Shown here piece after piece: positions 3,976 to 58,470 of a DNA stretch of 59,404 bases. The notes under the pieces were generated by a model. That model was given only the letters and a program-made list of their open reading frames with translations. It was not told the DNA's origin and did no database searches. This DNA comes from Kudoa neothunni (taxonomy: Eukaryota; Animalia; Cnidaria). The stretch is from the NCBI GenBank assembly GCA_964304625.1, contig OZ199840.1, positions 8,287,053 through 8,346,456 on the forward strand. The letters are read 5' to 3'. The translations under genes and the position numbers were made by a program. The stretch's first letter is position 1, and the number at the start of each line of letters is the position of its first letter.

Positions 3976-6409
3976 TTAAGCACACTCTCCATAGCAGCGC
4001 CAAATTTTATAAAAAATAGTACTCTTTTTGTTGTTACTGGATACAGTAAACTCGATCACACGTAAAACATCTGGCGAATCTGACGCCTAAGGAGCACAAT
4101 TAAACGTTGAACAATTATGTCCTGATAAGAATAAGACAGAAAATGATTCTAACCGTAGATATGGTAACGCTTTGAATTTTCGAAGTAAGGATGGATAAAT
4201 AGGAGTGTTTTTCAAAGAAACTTTCCTCAATCATTCTGTTCGCCTCTAACCATTACATTTTGATTAATTAGCAAGCAATCTCAAATACTTACCTATATAA
4301 TTCAACTGTTTAGCCAACTCGATGCGAGTATTGATTCTTGTAAGCAATGCTTGGATATAACTATCAATTGTTTGGGAGGTCAGGATTTTAAGTATCTAAG
4401 ATCAACCTCGAACTATACAAACCTAGTCAAATTGGTTAGATAGATACGCTTTGGTCTTTAATATCCGTTAATTTGAGATTATCACCAAGAAATTGAACCC
4501 AATTATAGAGCCTATCAATTGCTAAAACTTGGAAAACCCAAACAAAATACTTGAATCCATGATGAGTCTTGGATGGCGTATCCGAGAAAAACAGCGAATC
4601 AAACACCGATAGGCTGTTCAAAAAATTGCTAGCAGACATTTAATAAAAAATCATCCAGAAAAAGATTACAAATTGTCTTGCGGAGCTTGGGTAGCTTGGG
4701 TAGCGTTAAATTTCAATATAGGCTTCAGAAGAATGCTCTCCAATGATGGGTCAAAAACAAAGTCCAACAACAATGATAATATTGACTGAAATCGATCTAA
4801 ACCAACCTATATATATATAAATATAGAATTCATCATATACCGTTGGTATTTTTGAGCGCGAAACGAACGACATATTCAAACGTTTTGGATGACTAAAAAA
4901 TACAAATAATCTAAACATTTCGAATATTCACCCACATTTTTTTGGTTTGAGTTATTTAGTTTGTTACAATCAATTACTTTCACCTTGTATTTGATACCTA
5001 AACAACAATTCAAATCACTATCTTGATCACAATAATTTTATTACGATTAGTATAGGATTCATTAAGATGGCAGAAATGGAATAATTTTGTGTACAGAATG
5101 AACAGCGGTCTACACCAAATTTTATAATATCCAAAACAAATGATAACAATAAAGATTGAGGCATACGGTGGTAGTTTTGAAAGAATATTTTGGTTCAACG
5201 ATACAACACAGCAGTTTTCATTAATCAATAAATTCTCAATAGGTTCCGCAGCCTAGATTTTAGTTATTTATAGAAGGAAAAAATATAATATTGATAAATA
5301 TTATAATATAGAATAACTCAGTGTGACTTGTAACAATTAATAATTAAATCAACCTGAGTAAAAAATGCAGCCAAAAATCAAAAAAATGCTGTAACCAGGA
5401 TTCGAACCTGGGTTATCACGGCCACAACGTGAGGTACTGACCACTATACGATTACAGCTCGGGGGAGCTTCGGAATTTACCAAATATATATAGTATATAA
5501 TTACTTTAAGAATGTCTCCCAAGAAGGGATTGATTGAATTCAACATTTTCAAAAGATTAGTAGTAGTGAGTTTTAGCAGCTCAACTTTAGTTTTAGACTC
5601 TTCAACCAATTGTTTGTAGCTAATTTGTAGCAGAGTAAACAACACAGTGAAATAACAGAACGCGAATTGTCTCACCGTTGTCGTTCCTCTATCTCGAAAT
5701 GTAATCGTTTCATCAATTGTTGATGCTGTTCTGTTTCACTTAGGTTATGGATGTTGGAGTCTTCTATTGTTTCAGGGCAAAGATCCAATTCTGAGATGTT
5801 GTATCTAATAGAAAATCAACTAATTAATTATATTGAAAGTGAAAAAATTACAATTTGACACTATATGAATTCATTTGCTGTTTTAGCAAATCGATTTCCG
5901 CATACAAACTTTGAAGTTCGTACACTAGCATGTCAACTTTTTCATTTTGCTACAGTACCGTTTTTTACCAACAAAAACACACAAAATAACAAATATTATA
6001 ATAATACAAATCATCATTAAAGTAGGATAATTGCTATTTGTTCAAATTTTATAGTGAGATTAAAATTATGAAGGAGTTTGGTTGGAGACTTAATTTTATT
6101 ATCAACAAAAAATGGATATACCTCGGAAACCAATCTCTTTTGTTGGTCATAATGTTCTCTTATTTCACAGCTTCGTCGTTTGATTTGAGACAGGGTTATC
6201 AGACCATTTTTGAGGATATCCTCATTGGAATCCTATCCAAATAGAAACCCAAACAGAAAATTTCATATCACTTTTGAGTTCAAATTATTCAGTGTCTTTT
6301 TGAATTTTTCACAGAGATTCACCGCAATTATTGGTAGATTAAAATCATCCATTTTTGATGTTGAAAGTGCCCGAATGTTGACGAGGTGATCATCTGTGGT
6401 GGTTTTCAT
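3976..6409 (-). CDS. THOC5: THO complex subunit 5 (FMIP) homolog, multi-exon
   Basis: Spliced minus-strand exons read ...NEKVDMLVYELQSLYAEIDLLKQQ..., HQQLMKRLHFEIEERQR, NPFLGDILK/AAEPIENLL, LSKLPPYASIF and RLYNWVQFLG, colinear with THOC5 motifs (KVDAYHLQLQNL, HQQTLARLDWELEQRKR, ARHLPPPLY, PYLWVQKLG). ATG at 6409; 3' end approximate. Confidence 0.8.
5387..5458 (-). tRNA. tRNA-His(GTG), intronic in THOC5
   Basis: Reverse complement GCTGTAATCGTATAGTGGTCAGTACCTCACGTTGTGGCCGTGATAACCCAGGTTCGAATCCTGGTTACAGCA: cloverleaf, A/B boxes, GTG anticodon, followed by a T6 Pol III terminator. Confidence 0.96.
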
Positions 6410-49300: not shown

Positions 49301-49799
49301 TTAAGGAAAGGTTGCAAGCGCACTCCTGTTATGTAAAGTTAGTCATCATGGGTATTTCAACAACAAAATAAATTAAAGCAAACACTTGACCATGAGTTGA
49401 CCTAGTTGACCTTAAAACAATAAATTTGCTGTCTAAGTGGAATGTGCTTTCCAATTTAAAACAGTAAACTGTATAGATATTAGTCTAATGTTTAGATTTT
49501 TTCTTAATAATTTTTCGGAATATATAGCGGTTTCATTTTGGTGTAGTTCAAAATTTGATCTATATTGCGATATCCTATGTTATTTATTTTTCAATTAAAA
49601 ATATGTTCCCACTGAGGTCGTTAGTATTTTTGAACGCATATTTCACTATTGCTTTAAAAAAATATCTCAGCCAACTGCACCTAGAGCACACAAAAATTTT
49701 TCTTTTCCTTTTAAGTTTTGGAATATAAAGTATTAAATCTTCAAGAATTTAGGCAATTTTTTACATAAAAATTTTTCCAGAATTATTATTTTATTCATT

Positions 49800-50140
49800 C
49801 GGCTCCAAATCTTAGTGATTATTACATGAAGGGAAGTATCGAAAGTTTTTATTTTCGTTTGCAACTTCCGTAGCGTCCATTTGCCGCCATCCAACATCAA
49901 CTTATGTCGACACGTAACAAATGAAACTTAATTTTCAGCATCTCGATGCTATCGGTACCGACAATACTCATCATCTATATTTACGCCAATGCTAACAATC
50001 GGTGACCTTTATTCTCGTTTCCTCATATGGCACAAAATACAGCGACATGTCTTTAGGAAAAGGTGGCGACGCATAAACTTCTAACTAGCGCCGTTAGAAT
50101 CGCCACAAAAAAGTTCACGTAGGTGGCTGCAAAAACGAAA
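49800..50140 (-). mobile_element. Decayed 5' end of an older relative of the tRNA-Phe-inserted retrotransposon
   Basis: Translates with frameshifts and stops to MSLYFVPY..KGHRLLAL..EY..RH...KWTLRKLQTKIKTFDTSLHVIITKI, versus the element N-terminus MSLYFLAY..KGHRLPTL..EY..RH...KSSLKKLRTKLKTAETSLQVVLCKF. Shares the 21-nt 5'UTR hairpin. Confidence 0.8.
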
Positions 50141-50142
50141 AA

Positions 50143-50178
50143 TGTCGAAACCCGGGATCGAACCAGGGACCTTTAGAT
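50143..50178 (-). pseudogene. 3' half of tRNA-Phe (from nt 38 to the discriminator); downstream copy of the target duplication
   Basis: ATCTAAAGGTCCCTGGTTCGATCCCGGGTTTCGACA identical to 57334-57369; abuts the retrotransposon 3'UTR. Confidence 0.95.
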
Positions 50179-50234
50179 TAATTATACAACAATTGACTAC
50201 ATGAGAAATTGTTTTTTTTATCTAATTAAATTGT

Positions 50235-53200
50235 TTATAGGTGGTTGGATGGATGGATTATTGGGTGACTGGGTGGACTTGTTCGCCAATTGGTTGTAGA
50301 TGTAGATGCCGAGGTGGTAGGTTTAACGTGTCTGTTGTAGATCAAACGAGACGCGTTAAGGGTGGATGAAGTGATGGAGTAGAGAAGGCGGGTCTTTCTC
50401 ATCTTCTTCAGCTTCAGGGCGATATATACCTCATTGTTTTGGGGGTGGTGGCTGCCGAGCGATCCGTAGGTAAGTGCGTAGAGGTCACATTGGTAACCTT
50501 TCTGCTGGAGTTCCATTTTTTCACGTGTATATTTGGTCATTTTCCTACCTTTGACTTCACTCATGCGAGACGCACATTGTTCATAGCAAATTGCTATTTT
50601 AATGATTATCACCTCACGAGTTTCTTCATTGATAAGGACAATGTCCGGCTTACGCATCGACGAAATCATGGGGACTTGCTTACCTAAACGTATGGACCAT
50701 TGCGAAGGGAGCTTGATGCTGTCTGCAACTAGTTGCATGATATCATCATGGCGTTTCACAATGCCAGCGTTTCCAAATTGGCAGCCGTTCAGGACATGAC
50801 CAAGAGATTCCGAGTCGCAATTGCAACGTCGGCATCTCATGTCAGGGGCCATCTTAGCTTTCTTCAGCACATATCTCACTGGTAGCACGTTGATTCTGCC
50901 CTTCACCGCAAATTTGAAAGTAGCTATGCTCATATCGCATTTACGGATCCACGCATTACTCACCGGCGACCAGCTAAAGCAATCCACAGATCGACCTTGG
51001 TCTTTCTGCGAACGCCACATGTGCCACCAAACTTGATTGCAGTGCCAGCGAAGACGTCTGGTTCTTGTAATCGAGACAGTTTGATGAGGACGAAGATGGG
51101 AGGGTTCGTGTAAACTTTCACGATTAAGTTCAACTAGCGTCGGTTTATCGGAATCATCAATAAGGTGAACACCGAGAGCTTTTCTATTAATTCTGATGGA
51201 AGATAACAAGCTTCTGATGTCACGCGTATGGGTTGATTCTCGATCTTGGTTGAGGTAGTCGACAGGAGATGTTGCACTGGATGGATTGGTTCGATGTCGG
51301 ACGATTTCTTTCAACGCATTGCCAGCAATGGTTTGAATTCTCTCGTCCCTTGAATTGAGGATATCCAGTCCAGCTGCAAGACGAAGGCAAGCGTAGTCTT
51401 TATGCAGATAGCGGAGGCCGAGGCCACCCATTGATACTGGCACATAGAACATTGCCTTTGTCGATGACTTTGGTAGTTGGAGCCATGCTCTCACGTTTGA
51501 GGCAATGAGAACATCAATTTTCTTTATGTCTTCAATTCGAAGACAGGCCGTTTTCATTGTGTACTCCAATAGAGGAAAGAGATACACACGCAATAGCTCC
51601 AGCTTCTGGAAAGGGAACAAGGGTGATATTGATACCAACCTTAGCTTTGCTTGGAAGTTAGCAAAGGCAGGCGGAAGTTGCTTGAAGGATTGCAAGTTAC
51701 TTGTAGTGCCAAGGTATTTGTAAAAGTCGACCAGCAACGGAATATTTTGTCCACATACTTGTAGAGGTGGGTCCTCAGGATTGTTGACGACACGGCGGTT
51801 GCGTTGATAACACACAAGTAAGCTTGCACATTTGGAGTGGTTGATGACCAAGTGGTTATTCTGAACAAATTCTTCAAGCTTTAAAAGGAGCTGATTCATC
51901 TGCTCAGGTTTCTGGCTTATAAGAACGATATCATCAGCATATGCTAATGCACCAATCTTTTCGCCACAAAGTTGATAGCCAAGAGGGGAATCGTCGATTT
52001 CTTGAAGGAAGGGATCGATGATAGCGTTGAATAGAAGCGGAGACAAGGGACATCCTTGTCTCACACCTTTTCCGTTTAGAGGAATGTGTTCGATAGCGCC
52101 AGAGCGGTCACGAGCCACATTGTAGCAGTTGGAATACAGATTGGCTATCAGTTGTTGAATGGATGGGGGGACACGATGTTTTTTCATTTGGTCGAATAGT
52201 TGTTGGTGAGGGACGGAGTCGAAAGCACTCTTCAAGTCAATCCAAGCCACTTGGAGCTTCTTTCTGGTGCGTCGACTGTCATCAAGTATTTCTTGAAGTG
52301 AAAAACTATGCTCCACACAGCCGTCTCCTTCAAGAAAACCTTTCTGGGATGGAGATAGTTTTACAATGGCACAAAGTTTTCGGTTGAGGACAGACATGAA
52401 GAGTCTGTAGATGGTTTGGGTGATGGAAATGGGTCTGTAGTCGCCTACAGCCCGAGGGTTGGGATTTTGCTTCTTTGGAAGCAAAACCAGTCTTGACTCG
52501 CGCCATGAATCTGGAATAAAGTTGGATTGAACTATTCGATTGAAGAGGGGTTGCAGAACAAACTCCACATTTGGGAGTTGTTTCCAAAAAGACATCTGGA
52601 TCCCATCCGTTCCCGGAGTGGTATCTTTACGAGCTTTTTGAACAGCGAGAGCCACCTCTTCTGGTGTAATGAAAAAGTCGGAGTAGTGGTTACCAGAGTT
52701 GTATATATCATCATCACGGACGGTGGTATCTTCAACGGCGATGGTAACATTTGATGTGGTGGTTGGACTAGAGGATGAAAAGTGGCTGGAGATATCTTTC
52801 GCAGACGCTTCACACCATACAGGAGCGGGTTCCGTTATCTCACGGAAGCAGCGCTTTTGATTAGTCCGGTAGAGTCCTCTCAGTCTCTTTGTTTGCTCTT
52901 GGTTCAATTTGTCGACTGGAGGCGGAGGATCTTTCACTGGAATAGGTCCACTTGGAATAATGTAGAATTGGTTGAGAGATTGAGACGCCATGGTAGCTTG
53001 TTCAATAAAGTTATTAAAGACAGTGTCCATGGGGAGATCGTTTTGAGTGGAGAGCAATCGAAGGAGGGCAGTTGATGTGTTCTTCTTCAATTGTTCTCGT
53101 TCCACCTTGTTCATTCTTCTATTGGAGGGTGTAGTGTTATTCTCGCTAGCTGATGATGAATTTGGCACGAGGTTTGTGATTAGAAGAGAAGGGACTCTCA

Positions 53201-53718
53201 TACCATTTTCGATTTCAGCTTGCGGGATTTCCGCAGGTACAGATGTAGGGAGAACAACATTGGGGTCTTCATGAAAGTTTGGGGTAGAATTATCTTGAGA
53301 GAAGTTGTGATTTCGCGCGTCGGCAACAAAATCATCAACTTCTTGTGAAGTTGTGTTGTGTATAAGGGAGAAAAAAGTGGCTACATTTGTGGCACAATGG
53401 GAATCGAATTTACTCGTCTTTTGGGATCTTTGCGACGTAGCAGGGCTATCAATCGAGTCAAAAGTGATGGGAAAGAAAGTAAATTGATTTTCATCTTCGG
53501 ATTCAGATGAAACTGTGCCGCCAAAGGTTACAGTTCTCGTTGGAGAAGCAGTAGAACTGCATCTTCTTTTCTTAGGGGTCATAATAGAATCTTCTGGAAT
53601 GACAGTTGACAAACATTCACCCGCATGATGTTCATCAATTGTGAAATGAGGATCATCAGAAGATTCAGCCTGAACACGTCTGGATGGTCGAGCAAGCACG
53701 AAAAAGTTCTTCTTAGCA
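50235..53718 (-). CDS. RT-endonuclease ORF, C-terminal part (RT, CCHC knuckle, PD-(D/E)xK-like endonuclease)
   Basis: PGTDG, YRPIS, QKGF, WIDLKSAFDSV, GVRQGCPLSPLLFN, YADD, YKYLG, CRRC..ESLGHVLNGC, RHD, RKPDIV. Confidence 0.95.
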
Positions 53719-53723
53719 TCAAG

Positions 53724-53852
53724 TGTTATACGCAGAGTATTAACTTTGTAGTGTTTTTACCCTTCTATAAAAAGGGTTATTACGATATCGATTGGGTCCG
53801 TAAATAAGTGTTTCTATGGCGTGTCCTGAACAGAATTCGAACGACATTAACA
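53724..53852 (+). repeat. 5' LTR (129 bp)
   Basis: TGTTATACG...ATTAACA identical to 56256-56384; contains TATAAAA inside the inverted repeat ACCCTT/AAGGGT. Confidence 0.96.
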
Positions 53853-54583
53853 ATGGCGCAGTGAGCAGGATCGCGAGGCCGCAACTATATGATGGAAAGA
53901 GCTGTCCAAAAAATTGGTTCAGAAGATTTGAGCTTTCCGTGAGAAGACAAAACTTGAATGTTGTCTTATATAGTTCTGAGTTGTTGCTATCATTGGATGA
54001 TAACGTTTGGACGATGGTTTCATCAGTGGGTCTGGATGAAAATACGCCATATGAACAAATTAAAGTTTACATCATGGAACGATTTGGCCAAGAGATTGAT
54101 CATTATGATGCAATGAAATGTTTTGTGAATCGGATGCAGCGAGAAGATGAGAATGTGCAACAATTCGCGGAAAACCTGATAGCACTCGGGCGGAAGTGCT
54201 ATACAACCATGCACACAAGTGAATTTGATCGAGTGATATGTAACCAATTCATCAGAGGACTTCGTTCTGAAGATTCTAAGAAGTTTTTGTTACTTGGGAA
54301 CATGACTAATGTTCATGATGCCCTTAGAGCCGCTAAACGACTTGAAAGTCTGGATGGATCATCAAATGTCATGGTTAATTCTGAAAAAAAAGAACGTTTG
54401 CTTGCTTTAAAAACGGATATTAAGAGCTCGAGTGTTTCGGAAAGAATTCGTGAGCTAGAGGAGGCCATAAAGTCATTGAGACTGAATGTGGAAAATGTGA
54501 GTCCTCCGCGGAAAAATATATCAAAAGGTTGGAATGGAAAGAATAGAAGATGTTTCAGAAAAAGTTATGGGATATTCAAGTAG
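53816..54583 (+). CDS. Gag (truncated at the start of the zinc knuckle)
   Basis: PQLYDG...WFRRFE, QREDENVQQFAENL..L..KC, QFIRGL; ends RRCF and then runs out of frame. Confidence 0.85.
   Translation: MACPEQNSNDINNGAVSRIARPQLYDGKSCPKNWFRRFELSVRRQNLNVVLYSSELLLSLDDNVWTMVSSVGLDENTPYEQIKVYIMERFGQEIDHYDAMKCFVNRMQREDENVQQFAENLIALGRKCYTTMHTSEFDRVICNQFIRGLRSEDSKKFLLLGNMTNVHDALRAAKRLESLDGSSNVMVNSEKKERLLALKTDIKSSSVSERIRELEEAIKSLRLNVENVSPPRKNISKGWNGKNRRCFRKSYGIFK
53854..53871 (+). other. Primer-binding site, complementary to the 3' end of a tRNA-Ser
   Basis: TGGCGCAGTGAGCAGGAT; reverse complement ATCCTGCTCACTGCGCCA resembles eukaryotic tRNA-Ser 3' ends plus CCA. Confidence 0.75.
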
Positions 54584-56228
54584 AGTTTTAACGGACCAAG
54601 AGAAGAATTATTCGACAAATCGAAAGGAATTGCTCGCGATAGTGAATGGTTTGAAGGAGTTTAGACCGTACCTGTTGGGAAGGAAGTTTACCATACGAAC
54701 TGATCATTCAAGCTTGAAATCGTTAATGAATTATAAAGATTTGACAGGGCAACTAGCAAGGTGGATGGAATATATTAGTGATTTCGACTTTTGTATAATT
54801 CATAGAAAGGGTCAAATGCATGACAATGCTGATGCGTTATCGCGTACAACCCAATGTGCTATGGTTGAATTGGGTGCTGGAGTTTGTTTGGATGATGAAA
54901 TTAAAGAGAGACAAATGAGTGATTCGTGTATTCAAATGGTGATGAATAGTTTACGAGAGAATAAATCATTGAATGTGAGATTACTTGATAAAAGAACACA
55001 TGCTCTGTGGATGTGTAGAAGCTCATTGAGGATAATTGATAATGTGCTGTATAGAGTATGGTCAGATAATTTCGATAAAAGTCATTTAAGAATTGTTATT
55101 CCCCAATCAATGGTTAGCAAGATAATTGAATTAGCACACAACAGTTTGACATCTGGTCACTTGGGCTCAGATAGAACTCTAAGCAGACTACAACCCATTT
55201 GTTATTGGCCTCTTCAGAGGAAAGACGTCGTACGATGGTGTTTGTCTTGTCATGTCTGCGCTCAAAGGAATCGTTTGAATAGGCCTTACAAAAGAGAGCT
55301 AATGTTAGACAAATCAAGCGAACCTTTGGAAAGAATTGGTGTAGATATTGTAGGGCCGCTTCCAATTACTGATCGAGGTAATCGTTTTATTTTGGTAGTG
55401 ATGGATTACTATACAAAATATTGTGAGGCATATCCATTGCCCGATCAGTCAGCGAAAACAATTTCACAGGTATTGGTAGAAGAATTTATCGCCAGATACG
55501 GCATCCCCAAAAGTATTCATTCTGATAGAGGTGGCTGTTTTGAGTCTGAAATTTATGGTGAGACATTGAGATGTTTGGGTATAAAGAAGACGAGAACTAC
55601 AGCTTATTATCCGCAGTCAAATGGAATGGTTGAAAGGTTTAATCGGACTCTAATTGACTCATTGGCGAAAATTTGTACTGATAAGAAAAACTGGGATAAC
55701 TACCTTTTTTTTGTATTGTGGGCTTATCGGTCATCAATTCACGAAAAGACAAAAGCTACACCTAATTTGATGATGTTTGGTCGGGAACATAGAACAACTT
55801 TGGAGCTGATTCTTGGAGAAAATCAGAATATTCCAAATCATAACAGAGAATTTATTTACAATTTTAATAACATTTACAAGAAGGTGAATATGCAAATAGA
55901 AAAAGAAAATCTAAGGAGATTGAATCAATCTCATAAGATCACACATGGACCGACATATTTACCAGGAGACAAAGTATGGTTAATGAAGCAAATTCGAAAT
56001 AATAAATTAGATGATTACTGGATTGGACCTTATTCAATTATTAAGAAGATTAATGAAAGGATTTACAAAGTTGATATCGATGGGAGAGTGGAAACAATAA
56101 ATTACGATAAGCTCAAACCGGCTGAAAATTATAAAGAAGATACTTATGGCAACTTTGGTGGTGCAAATGAAGGCACGGAAAAAAGAACACGAAAATCTCC
56201 GTCGTGGTTAAAAGATTTTGAATGTTAA
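54534..56228 (+). CDS. Pol remnant: C-terminal RNase H plus complete integrase (HHCC, DDE, GPY/F)
   Basis: GYSSRVL..EKNYST..ELLAIV, TDHSSL, ADALSR, H..GHLG...CHVC, VDIVGP, SDRG, NGMVERFNR, GPY. Confidence 0.92.
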   Translation: MERIEDVSEKVMGYSSRVLTDQEKNYSTNRKELLAIVNGLKEFRPYLLGRKFTIRTDHSSLKSLMNYKDLTGQLARWMEYISDFDFCIIHRKGQMHDNADALSRTTQCAMVELGAGVCLDDEIKERQMSDSCIQMVMNSLRENKSLNVRLLDKRTHALWMCRSSLRIIDNVLYRVWSDNFDKSHLRIVIPQSMVSKIIELAHNSLTSGHLGSDRTLSRLQPICYWPLQRKDVVRWCLSCHVCAQRNRLNRPYKRELMLDKSSEPLERIGVDIVGPLPITDRGNRFILVVMDYYTKYCEAYPLPDQSAKTISQVLVEEFIARYGIPKSIHSDRGGCFESEIYGETLRCLGIKKTRTTAYYPQSNGMVERFNRTLIDSLAKICTDKKNWDNYLFFVLWAYRSSIHEKTKATPNLMMFGREHRTTLELILGENQNIPNHNREFIYNFNNIYKKVNMQIEKENLRRLNQSHKITHGPTYLPGDKVWLMKQIRNNKLDDYWIGPYSIIKKINERIYKVDIDGRVETINYDKLKPAENYKEDTYGNFGGANEGTEKRTRKSPSWLKDFEC

Positions 56229-56242
56229 AGCAAGCTTCAATC

Positions 56243-56255
56243 GGGAGAGAGAAAG
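56243..56255 (+). other. Polypurine tract
   Basis: GGGAGAGAGAAAG immediately 5' of the 3' LTR. Confidence 0.85.
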
Positions 56256-56384
56256 TGTTATACGCAGAGTATTAACTTTGTAGTGTTTTTACCCTTCTAT
56301 AAAAAGGGTTATTACGATATCGATTGGGTCCGTAAATAAGTGTTTCTATGGCGTGTCCTGAACAGAATTCGAACGACATTAACA
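56256..56384 (+). repeat. 3' LTR (129 bp)
   Basis: Identical to the 5' LTR. Confidence 0.96.
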
Positions 56385-57241
56385 TCAAGGAGATTGCAAG
56401 AGAGTTCTTCATCAGCATTTGACGCATCTTCCCGCGGAGCGTCTTTTTTGCTCATATCATCAGATCCATCCAGAGTATCTTGCTCTTGATTTGTAGCCAC
56501 CTGGGGTGCAAGCTCATCTGCTTGCGTACAAAATTTGGACGCCACAGCACCATTGGATGACTCAGAAATCGCCAAATTTTCTTCGCCATTATCGGTCAAG
56601 CGCTGCTCGCGCGTGCTGTCGTCCGTCAAAATGCCAAAATCAGCAATTTTTGGCATATTCGCTTCCTCATTAGAATTTTTGAGATCGTCATTGTCGATAA
56701 CTAATGAGGGGCCATCTACTCTCCTCAAAGGCGCAGAATTTTCTTCAACCGTCACCGCGAGCTCACCATCAACTGATTCTGACGAATTCTTTGAAGATGG
56801 CTCTACGACAACAACATCATTAGAATCAACATTACCTCGATTAGCAGTAGGAACAAGCTCAGAAACATCAAGCGTCAGATCTGGCAGAACGAGCACTTTG
56901 TCGCCATTGATGAGTTCGCTTGGAAGTTCGCCTAGGCGAACTTCCTCACGCACTCCATGGCAGAACTTACAAAGTACCACTTGAAGCGATGTTTCAGCGG
57001 TTTTCAGCTTCGTTCGAAGCTTCTTCAATGAGGACTTCTCATCACTCGTCAACGGCTCATGGCGTCCAAGTAGCGATGAGATCTCACTATCAGCACTCTG
57101 TTTTCGCAAACGAATGCGTTCATATTCTCCAGCTAACTTCACTAACGTTGGCAAGCGATGTCCTTTACCTCGACCATTAGTATAGGCCAGAAAATACAAC
57201 GACATAATGTCGCGTGGTGGGGTTTCACAACTTCCACTCAT
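56385..57241 (-). CDS. N-terminal part of the retrotransposon ORF
   Basis: Removing the Gypsy element and one TSD gives the in-frame join EELSCNLLD-AKKNFFVLARPSRR; 857+3484 nt = 1447 codons (1446 aa plus stop). Confidence 0.9.
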
Positions 57242-57333
57242 CGCACAATCTTCTAACTAGCGTCGTTAGATTCAGCAGATAAAATTAGATAAAACTATCC
57301 GCAAAAAGTTTATCCAAACTCCCTCAAAAACAA

Positions 57334-57406
57334 TGTCGAAACCCGGGATCGAACCAGGGACCTTTAGATCTTCAGTCTAACGCTCTCCCATCTGAGCTAT
57401 TTCGAC
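57334..57406 (-). tRNA. tRNA-Phe(GAA), intact
   Basis: GTCGAAATAGCTCAGATGGGAGAGCGTTAGACTGAAGATCTAAAGGTCCCTGGTTCGATCCCGGGTTTCGACA, followed by a TTGTTTTT terminator. Confidence 0.97.
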
Positions 57407-58043
57407 CTCCGACTGTTGGGGTTGGAATGATTATCTAAAATATAATGAAAGATTGTTGGATATTTCAGTGTAGAAGTTTTGTTTATTATACAAGGTTGTA
57501 TTTTAAAATGTTTTTTATATAATCGCTTTTATTATACCGGTGTTAATAATATTGATATAACGTTTCTTAACATTAGAAGGCACTTGTTATTAATTTAATG
57601 TGGCGCTGTAGAAAAACACTCTGTTTATAATGATACCAGATAAATGCCGCTTAGAGGGATAATCTATTGTTTATTATACTGCATATGTTATTTAACATAA
57701 GCAATCCCGTCACACACTAGAAAAAATTAGCATAAAGCACAACGTACCTTTTTTCCGCTACTAAATTAATGAAATAAAATAACCAAAAATTTCATTATTT
57801 TGTGCAATTACTTCGTAAAATAGATTATCTTTTATGGTCCTCACACCGAAATTGGGAACAATAATCACATAATAATAGACTCTTTCAACAAAATTTTGGC
57901 GCAAATTGCAACCAACAATTTGTGCGTTAATGATTTTATTAATTAGTTCTGAATTCAAATTTGTTTCTTCGAAATCAATATCTGCTTTTATTAGCTCTAT
58001 ACATGGGATCTGAAAATATTCCTTTCTTAGTCTGCTTCTTGTA

Positions 58044-58470
58044 TCATAACCTTAGTTCGGATTGTTTTTGACAATAAAACAATAATAAGTTCCAAGCAGT
58101 TATATTTACTAGATTATACAATATTGTCGTAAGACATTCTTTATTTATTATTTTCATCAAGTGATATTTTACATGCTGGTTTAAAATGGCTACACCTCCC
58201 CTTGTTGAGTTGTGGTATTCGATTACTATCGGTTTTCTTGATTTTTCGTCGAATTTGCAAGTATTTAGTAGAAAACTGAGTAAAACTCGAGATTTATGCT
58301 TATATGCATTAAACCTGGAAAATGTAACCTTGTTTTGAAACCAGAAAAAACGTATGCTCACAGTACCTTTCGAATATTGAAGTTTTTTGTAACTAAATTC
58401 TTTCGTTTTTTCTTAGAGTCCCGAAAACAGTCTGTTGTGTCCAAATTTAGAAAGCGGTTAGCAAAAGAAA
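58044..58470 (-). pseudogene. Decayed piggyBac (PGBD-like) transposase
   Basis: KPIVIEYHNSTRGGVAILNQ...LYNLVNITAWN (cf. KP.II.YYN.TKGGVD.LDQ...FYN.LDIA..N). Confidence 0.75.

What the first reader, a model, noticed from the sequence alone, without database searches (positions are those of the whole stretch)
50141..57406. tRNA-Phe-targeting R2/NeSL-type retrotransposon that regenerates its target tRNA gene
Seen (minus strand): intact tRNA-Phe, then a ~90-nt UTR, then an RT/CCHC/restriction-like-endonuclease ORF, then a 56-nt UTR, then the tRNA-Phe 3' half starting in the anticodon loop (GAAG^ATCTAA). A 38-bp direct repeat (tRNA nt 38 to the end plus TT) flanks the element, and a T5 Pol III terminator follows the upstream copy. 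Known: RLE retrotransposons (R2, NeSL, Utopia) insert site-specifically by target-primed reverse transcription; R9 of rotifers makes a long TSD; some NeSL-clade families are reported to target tRNA-Arg or tRNA-Glu. Inference: first-strand cleavage in the anticodon loop, plus either second-strand cleavage ~38 bp away or a tRNA half carried at the element's 5' end, leaves a functional tRNA, i.e. a harmless and reusable landing site. I do not recall a tRNA-Phe-specific family with this restoring geometry. It could be relevant as a safe-harbour insertion tool.
Basis: partly seen in the sequence, partly recalled or inferred. Interest (0 to 1): 0.92.

Follow-up and report, generated by a model that had tools for sequence, protein, structure and literature searches.

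The report
Retrotransposon that rebuilds its tRNA target
A dead copy of an R2-like jumping gene sits inside the genome's only detectable phenylalanine tRNA gene yet leaves that gene whole by duplicating its second half, and related elements do the same at about 15 other tRNA genes of this genome.

Summary
On the minus strand lie an intact tRNA-Phe(GAA), a 92-nt leader, one RT/CCHC/restriction-like-endonuclease ORF, a 56-nt trailer, and a second copy of tRNA nt 38-73.

- The ORF is split by a young nested Ty3/gypsy remnant.
- The second nuclease acidic residue is Lys in this copy.
- The sequence after the half-tRNA is the decayed 5' end of an older related element.
- This family is single-copy in the genome.

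Support comes from relatives at 40-52% RT identity. 15 of 18 RT clusters in the 40-Mb assembly begin just downstream of an intact same-strand tRNA gene (about 0.07 expected by chance). Every readable 3' end abuts a tRNA 3' half starting at position 37/38(39), for at least 11 different tRNAs. Two metagenome assemblies and one contig in a fish assembly show the same layout. tRNA-Phe and tRNA-Cys are single-copy here, so regeneration looks necessary.

I found no published description. The closest are the NeSL/LIN tRNA-specific families and Phytophthora Utopia/U2 arrays. The 5'-junction mechanism (staggered cleavage or a carried half) and the clade assignment (R2 or NeSL) remain open. The scan had already noted the Cys and Lys cases in this genome.

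The parts
57334..57406 (-). Intact tRNA-Phe(GAA), the 'head' gene. Nt 1-37 come from the original target. Nt 38-73 are the upstream copy of the duplication.
   Evidence: ARAGORN. Rfam RF00005 67.1 bits. It is the only full match in the 40-Mb assembly.
57329..57369 (-). Upstream copy of the direct repeat: tRNA nt 38-73 plus TTGTT.
   Evidence: the repeat finder D3, 41 nt at 98% identity.
57242..57333 (-). 92-nt leader. It holds a T5 Pol III terminator (57330-57326) and the clade-conserved motif GCTGAATCTAACGACGCTAGTTAG (57276-57253).
   Evidence: Sequence. A related TCTAACG-type motif is readable in about 11 related units. The fold is not better than shuffles, z -0.79.
56385..57241 (-). N-terminal piece of the single ORF (285 codons plus 2 nt). 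It carries the clade-specific helical N-terminal domain.
   Evidence: ORF list. No Pfam domain. The motif YFxAY..GK..KLPxL is conserved across families. AF2 model with pLDDT 80 and no fold match.
53719..56389 (+). Nested, internally deleted Ty3/gypsy LTR retrotransposon. LTRs are at 53724-53852 and 56256-56384. The TSD TCAAG is at 53719-53723 and 56385-56389. ORFs are at 53816-54583 and 54534-56228.
   Evidence: 132-nt repeat at 100% identity. Sequences show TGTTA..TAACA ends, a PBS and a polypurine tract. Pfam RT_RNaseH, Integrase_H2C2 and rve.
50235..53718 (-). C-terminal piece of the ORF. RT lies at about 52478-51774, with YADD at 51941-51930. The CCHC motif is at 50834-50781. The RLE motif RKPD is at 50654-50643. 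Lys (AAA) at 50600-50598 stands where relatives have D or E.
   Evidence: Pfam RVT_1 E 6e-36. PDB R2 proteins E 5e-74, two aligned stretches. Motif alignment. Coordinates.
50179..50234 (-). 56-nt trailer ending in TTGTATAATTA. Similar 3' ends occur in related families.
   Evidence: Sequence. The same ending occurs at the L008, L012 and L016 junctions, with variants in other families.
50138..50178 (-). Downstream copy of the repeat: tRNA-Phe nt 38-73 plus TTTTT. This is the disrupted half of the target.
   Evidence: the repeat finder D3. Whole-genome BLAST hit covering nt 38-73 at 100%.
49811..50137 (-). Decayed 5' end (leader plus start of the N-terminal coding region) of an older, related element.
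   Evidence: blastn 81% over 43 nt and a tblastx hit. tblastn aa 34-92 at 37% identity, E 6e-5. Alignment at 75% mean column identity.

Best explanation
This is a relic copy of a site-specific non-LTR retrotransposon that carries a restriction-like endonuclease and whose target is the tRNA-Phe gene.

Shown:
- The element lies between a complete tRNA-Phe and a second copy of tRNA nt 38-73.
- It encodes RT, a CCHC motif and an RLE of R2 type.
- It belongs to a clade whose members all sit in this position at other tRNA genes.

Inferred from the R2 paradigm of target-primed reverse transcription:
- The protein nicks the antisense strand at position 37/38, on the 3' side of the anticodon loop.
- It primes cDNA synthesis on the trailer, which ends in TTGTATAATTA.
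- The 5' end is joined downstream of the tRNA. Nt 38-73 plus the first flank bases therefore end up on both sides.
- The 5' joining comes either from second-strand cleavage at least 38 bp downstream, or from pairing of the cDNA end with a tRNA half carried at the RNA 5' end.

Result: a complete, terminator-equipped tRNA gene upstream, which can be hit again, and an inert half downstream. Repeated hits stack elements head to tail, youngest next to the tRNA. Here that gives the LTR-interrupted copy followed by an older stump.
For: - Anatomy of the locus and protein domains.
- Genome-wide, 15 of 18 RT clusters lie 1.1-4.6 kb (distance to the first RT match) downstream of an intact same-strand tRNA. 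That is 15 of the 38 tRNA genes listed. I estimate about 0.07 expected by chance.
- About 20 readable junctions in at least 11 different tRNA species start 13-15 nt before G53, i.e. at nt 37/38(39).
- At tRNA-Cys the repeat starts at the same canonical position and runs on for at least 300 nt at 100% identity into the next unit.
- Independent contigs show the same layout: L033, L034, L038 and L036.
- Distal units are the most decayed in the C2:7.57-Mb and C3:3.35-Mb arrays (stop counts) and in the window.
- tRNA-Phe and tRNA-Cys are single-copy. Only insertions that keep the gene whole could persist.
- Long duplications by RLE elements are precedented. The S6 figure of PMC4640811 shows LIN15_SM junctions at about nt 26 and nt 66 of tRNA-Arg.
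Against: - This family has one copy, so its own specificity is not shown directly.
- No empty tRNA-Phe site is available, so the true extent of the duplication and the native flank are unknown.
- No reads could be examined, so there is no transcript start and no check of the assembly.
- This copy has Lys in the nuclease motif and a nested LTR element, so it cannot itself be active.
- Three of 18 clusters have no listed tRNA upstream. The tRNA list is a lower bound, so this is not decisive.
- Arrays could also grow by unequal crossing-over.
- No cleavage has been demonstrated.
Confidence: 0.78

Rival explanations
1. The element targets the region just downstream of Pol III genes by binding the transcription complex, as Dictyostelium TRE3 and Skipper-2 do. 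The tRNA is intact because it was never cut.
For: The ORF starts 92 nt after an intact tRNA. Elements that insert 8-150 bp downstream of tRNA genes are known (PMC5911963).
Against: This model does not explain why every element's 3' end abuts a tRNA 3' half starting at nt 37/38, identical to its own head tRNA: 36/36 for Phe, and 100% for Cys. The protein is RLE/R2-like, not APE/L1-like.
Confidence: 0.05
2. The duplicated half and the arrays arise mainly by unequal recombination or tandem duplication between tRNA halves, not by repeated retrotransposition into a regenerated target.
For: Some neighbouring units are identical. L004, L005 and L006 give equal scores. The leaders of Cys units 1 and 2 are 100% identical.
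Against: The first half-tRNA at each locus still needs an insertion event. In the window the two stacked units are very diverged, with 37% aa identity at the N-terminus. One tRNA (C2:1.04 Mb) hosts two separate RT lineages. Distal units tend to be the most decayed.
Confidence: 0.12
3. Mis-assembly: the half-tRNA and the element were joined by collapse of repeats.
For: None specific. Reads could not be checked.
Against: The nested LTR element has a perfect 5-bp TSD and leaves the host ORF in frame. The same architecture appears at 15 loci and in four independent assemblies.
Confidence: 0.02

Closest known systems
R2 (28S rDNA-specific RLE non-LTR retrotransposon; structures 8GH6, 9DOU, 9NL3)
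   Same: One ORF with a central RT, a C-terminal CCHC motif and a PD-(D/E)xK-type endonuclease. Phmmer gives E 5e-74 to 1e-61, aligning both RT and RLE. The 3' junction is precise and the orientation fixed, as expected for target-primed reverse transcription.
   Different: - No N-terminal zinc finger or Myb; a clade-specific helical domain instead.
- The target is a tRNA gene.
- The duplication is at least 38 bp, instead of a few bp lost or gained.
- No HDV-like ribozyme or R2 3' UTR element is detected.
- Only 26-34% identical to the nearest non-clade RLE proteins.
tRNA-specific NeSL-related families: NeSL-1_TV (tRNA-Pro), LIN15_SM (tRNA-Arg), LIN25_SM (tRNA-Glu); Kojima & Jurka 2015, PMC4640811
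   Same: RLE non-LTR elements with sequence-specific insertion inside tRNA genes. LIN15_SM ends in ...GTTGTATAATAATAAT..., which resembles the TTGTATAAT 3' ends seen here. Its two junctions imply a duplication of about 40 bp.
   Different: The LIN15_SM 3' junction is near nt 26 and its 5' junction lies inside the T arm, so the upstream copy is not a complete tRNA. The paper describes no regeneration, no arrays at single-copy tRNAs and no Phe family. Kinship with the present clade could not be tested because no reference sequences were available.
Utopia in Phytophthora (U2 snRNA gene-specific, NeSL clade), PMC4640811
   Same: The geometry matches. U2 fragments starting at nt 39 lie downstream of each element and intact U2 genes lie upstream. 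Elements form arrays and several lineages are kept in a low-copy target.
   Different: The target is U2 rather than tRNA, and an RNase H domain is present. The authors read the pattern as deletion of the 5' fragment, not as regeneration.
Prokaryotic phages and genomic islands that integrate into tRNA genes
   Same: The logic is the same: the crossover lies in the anticodon or T loop, and a copy of the tRNA 3' part restores the gene (my own knowledge, e.g. Williams 2002).
   Different: Those use tyrosine integrases and attP/attB recombination, are reversible, and are not retroelements.
R9 of bdelloid rotifers; Dictyostelium TRE5/TRE3; Dada DNA transposons
   Same: R9 is an RLE element with a very long (126-bp) target duplication (my own knowledge). 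TRE elements use tRNA genes as safe sites. Dada elements insert inside tRNA genes near the anticodon.
   Different: R9 targets multicopy 28S. TRE elements insert beside the gene, not in it, and are APE-type. Dada elements are DDE transposons that disrupt multicopy tRNA genes.

Membership tests
RLE-bearing non-LTR retrotransposons (R2 group in the broad sense) | Reverse transcriptase domain of non-LTR type | tested here: met
   Pfam RVT_1 E 6e-36. YADD box at 51941-51930.
RLE-bearing non-LTR retrotransposons (R2 group in the broad sense) | C-terminal CCHC motif followed by a PD..(D/E) restriction-like endonuclease, with no APE domain | tested here: inconclusive
   The CCHC motif (CRRCNCDSESLGHVLNGC) and RKPD are present and align to the R2 RLE. 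No Exo_endo_phos hit. In this copy the second acidic residue is Lys, whereas relatives have D or E. So the family meets the feature and this copy is mutated.
RLE-bearing non-LTR retrotransposons (R2 group in the broad sense) | Sequence-specific insertion with a precise 3' junction | tested here: met
   Met at clade level: 15 of 18 clusters lie at tRNA genes, with junctions at nt 37/38(39). This family has only one copy.
R2 clade in the strict sense | N-terminal C2H2 zinc finger(s) plus a Myb DNA-binding motif | tested here: not met
   No such Pfam hit in the window pieces, the L012 ORF or P0002. A more distant homologue, P0004, does show zinc finger plus Myb. The AF2 model is a helical hairpin.
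R2 clade in the strict sense | Target is the conserved 28S rDNA site | tested here: not met
   The flanks are tRNA-Phe.
R2 clade in the strict sense | HDV-like self-cleaving ribozyme at the 5' end | tested here: inconclusive
   No Rfam match at E <= 1 in 49700-57600. R2 ribozymes are divergent, so absence is weak evidence.
NeSL clade (NeSL-1, R5/LIN, Utopia) | RT groups with NeSL-1, R5 or Utopia in a phylogeny | not testable with these tools
   No Repbase or Dfam reference sequences are reachable. The tree only shows the clade as monophyletic against unnamed R2-like proteins.
NeSL clade (NeSL-1, R5/LIN, Utopia) | N-terminal zinc-finger motifs (one to three; PMC4640811) | tested here: not met
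   No Pfam hit. No conserved Cys/His pattern in the N-terminal alignment.

The most novel reading that the evidence does not exclude
An undescribed clade of R2-like retrotransposons has divided its host's near single-copy tRNA gene set among its lineages.
- Each lineage lives only in 'its' tRNA gene.
- All are joined at position 37/38 of the anticodon loop.
- All rebuild the gene by duplicating its 3' half, probably with the terminator.
- The regenerated gene is the landing pad for the next insertion, a homing-like life style that needs no multicopy target.

A bolder sub-reading, which I put at about 0.2: read-through of the downstream tRNA half lets the RNA itself help choose the target. That would make retargeting easy.
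Probability: 0.6. Interest if true: 0.85.

Novelty: new variant of a known kind. Interest (0 to 1): 0.75.

Why it matters
Site-specific retrotransposons are thought to survive by hitting multicopy genes, where a broken copy does not matter (PMC3706591, PMC4640811). Here the targets look single-copy and essential. The element avoids harm by leaving a whole gene behind, which is the solution bacterial phages and genomic islands use at tRNA genes, reached by a retroelement.

This could explain the puzzle Kojima and Jurka raised about how RLE elements persist in low-copy targets such as U2.

It also offers natural R2-like proteins with about a dozen different short, universally conserved DNA targets and a non-disruptive insertion geometry. 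That is of interest to the groups turning R2 into an insertion tool. The window copy itself is only a relic.

Tried and rejected
- **Wider flanks:** Array heads other than Phe and Cys were checked by coordinates only.
- **Reads:** There is no expression, transcript-start or long-read check.
- **Other Phe-family junctions:** two pattern scans of metagenome contigs found none.
- **RNA elements:** Rfam found no ribozyme or R2 3' UTR element. The leader and trailer fold no better than shuffles.
- **N-terminal domain:** the AF2 model (pLDDT 80) has no Foldseek match at E <= 0.001, only generic helical hairpins.
- **Staggered cleavage versus a carried half:** I compared the bases after the tRNA end in an array that holds two lineages. 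About 17 nt are shared, but the leaders stay partly alignable beyond that, so it is inconclusive.
- **Remnant extent:** relatives' proteins found no further remnant outside the element in the window.
- **Atlas look-alikes:** only generic RT clusters.
- **Organism:** not identified.
- **Clade assignment (R2, NeSL, R4, HERO or CRE):** not possible without reference sequences.
Full report
**1. What is at the locus**

All features below are on the minus strand.
- ARAGORN calls an intact tRNA-Phe(GAA) at 57406->57334. Rfam scores it 67.1 bits.
- TTG and a T5 run follow it. The leader is 92 nt long and the ATG is at 57241.
- The ORF ends at 50237-50235. A 56-nt trailer ends in TTGTATAATTA. The next bases, ATCTAAAGG..., repeat tRNA nt 38-73.
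- The repeat finder reports this as a 41-nt repeat at 98% identity, 57329-57369 against 50138-50178. All 36 tRNA bases are identical.

**2. The protein**

- The 1154-aa piece (53699-50235) has Pfam RVT_1 at E 6e-36.
- It matches solved R2 proteins (9NL3, 9DOU, 8GH6) at E 5e-74 to 1e-61, in two stretches covering the RT and the CCHC/endonuclease region.
- YADD, the CCHC motif and RKPD are present.
- No APE domain, zinc finger or Myb is detected.

**3.

(a) The ORF is interrupted.
- A 132-nt repeat at 100% identity resolves into two 129-bp LTRs with TGTTA...TAACA ends, at 53724-53852 and 56256-56384.
- They are flanked by a 5-bp TSD, TCAAG. A PBS follows the left LTR and a polypurine tract precedes the right one.
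- Inside are RNase H and integrase domains of Ty3/gypsy type but no RT.
- By coordinate arithmetic the two host pieces (57241-56385 and 53718-50235) share one frame, giving about 1446 codons.

(b) The nuclease motif is altered. Seventeen aligned relatives have D or E fifteen residues after the PD aspartate. This copy has Lys (AAA, 50600-50598). By analogy with R2 this residue is catalytic, which is my inference, so this copy's nuclease is probably dead.

(c) The DNA after the half-tRNA is not neutral flank.
- 50137->~49811 aligns with the element's own leader and first codons.
- blastn gives 81% over the leader motif, and tblastn gives 37% over aa 34-92.
- It is the stump of an older related element.

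(d) The family has one copy in the 40.26-Mb assembly. The other RT hits are 32-55% identical, and the full-length ones 40-50%.

**4. The test through relatives**

- An Rfam tRNA scan of the genome lists 38 genes, which is a lower bound.
- The 53 RT matches fall into 18 clusters.
- 15 clusters have an intact tRNA on the same strand, 1.1-4.6 kb upstream of the first RT match. I estimate about 0.07 expected by chance.
- In every locus where a 3' end can be read, the element is followed by a tRNA 3' half beginning 13-15 nt before G53, i.e. at position 37/38(39). This holds for at least 11 different tRNA sequences.
- The ends themselves resemble one another, as variants of (T)TGTAT(A/T)A(T)T.
- At tRNA-Cys (L018) the repeat starts at the same canonical position and continues for at least 300 nt at 100% identity into the next unit.
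- The layout is therefore [tRNA 1-37][38-73, element][38-73, element]...

**5. Other sources**

- The same layout occurs in ENA metagenome contigs L033, L034 and L038.
- It also occurs in a 12.8-kb contig of the Muraenolepis orangiensis fish assembly, with three tandem units. The half-tRNA there has an ATCGAAA T loop.
- An exhaustive HMMER search of 1.84 billion representatives finds only six cluster representatives at 46-49% identity. Identity then drops to 34% or less.
- The clade is therefore rare in public data and well separated from other RLE elements.

**6. Tree**

This is a quick IQ-TREE run; the careful search did not finish.
- The tRNA-resident clade is monophyletic, with aLRT 100.
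- Targets are conserved between this genome and the metagenome relatives: L013 with P0003, L017 with L034a, and L002-L004 with L033.
- One lineage (L012, L014, L015) sits at three different tRNAs.
- One tRNA (C2:1.04 Mb) hosts two lineages.
- So both long-term fidelity and target switching occur.

**7. Why regeneration matters here**

BLAST of the tRNA-Phe gene finds only itself and the half. The same holds for tRNA-Cys. With targets this scarce, a disruptive insertion would remove the only gene. This differs from the usual rationale that targets are multicopy (PMC3706591; PMC4640811).

**8. Mechanism**

Shown: the anatomy and its recurrence.

Inferred:
- Target-primed reverse transcription from an antisense-strand nick at 37/38.
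- A 5' junction placed beyond the tRNA end.

Two ways to reach that 5' junction remain open:
- A sense-strand cut at least 38 bp downstream. This matches what LIN15_SM implies in tRNA-Arg, and R9 in 28S (my own knowledge).
- Annealing of the cDNA end to the target through a tRNA half present at the RNA 5' end, as in R2 co-transcripts.

Both give identical products. My attempt to separate them from shared post-tRNA bases was inconclusive.

Distal units are the most decayed in the C2:7.57-Mb and C3:3.35-Mb arrays (stop counts) and in the window. This fits serial insertion at the regenerated head gene, although unequal crossing-over probably adds copies.

**9. Comparison with the literature**

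- Kojima and Jurka (PMC4640811) list tRNA-Pro-, tRNA-Arg- and tRNA-Glu-specific NeSL-related families. The LIN15_SM junctions do not restore the gene.
- The same paper reports, for Phytophthora Utopia, intact U2 genes upstream and U2 nt 39-end downstream, in arrays. It reads this as deletion of the 5' fragment. This is the closest published geometry.
- A 2018 review of Pol III-gene targeting lists only elements that insert beside tRNA genes.
- Six successful full-text searches found no description of a tRNA-regenerating RLE element.
- Repbase and Dfam could not be searched.

**10. Verdict**

The window copy is a broken relic of a Phe-specific family. I rate it a new variant of a known kind, with interest 0.75. 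The same scan had already flagged the Cys and Lys cases in this genome.

Noticed in passing
window 53853-53870 (+), and L012:5094-5130: The primer-binding site of the nested LTR element (TGGCGCAGTGAGCAGGA) is the exact complement of the 3' end plus CCA of the 82-nt tRNA that heads the L012 array (…TCCTGCTCACTGCG). The LTR element therefore appears to prime from a tRNA that is itself occupied by an RLE element.
   Followed up: partly
window 57253-57276 (-), and the leaders of related units in L008, L009, L011-L015, L017, L018, L024 and L030: A motif, (A/T)TCTAACG(A/G) and near variants, often with GCTGA before it, recurs 55-115 nt after the tRNA end in about 11 units despite otherwise divergent leaders. 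In the window it forms a small hairpin, CTAAC-N7-GTTAG. Function unknown; it could be a promoter, a start site or a protein-binding site.
   Followed up: partly
G000, whole genome: Only 38 tRNA genes were listed in 40 Mb. tRNA-Phe and tRNA-Cys each have a single detectable gene. The host seems to run on a near-minimal, mostly single-copy tRNA gene set.
   Followed up: partly
L036 (GCA_027704905.1, JANIIK010003181.1, Muraenolepis orangiensis assembly): A 12.8-kb contig in a fish assembly consists of three tandem units of this clade. It may come from an associated organism rather than the fish. In one unit the N-terminal motif is in a different frame from the main ORF.
   Followed up: partly
window 58044-58361 (-): A short ORF with weak similarity to the C-terminus of a piggyBac-type transposase (DDE_Tnp_1_7, E 6e-4, below the Pfam cut-off), just upstream of the tRNA-Phe gene.
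   Followed up: no
window 5387-5458 (-) and 5340-5386: tRNA-His shows no element in the ~290 nt read downstream. It is followed by T7-GA-T5-GG-CTGCA-T6, a double or triple T-run flank much like the bases that follow the occupied tRNAs. The terminator region may therefore be part of what gets duplicated.
   Followed up: no
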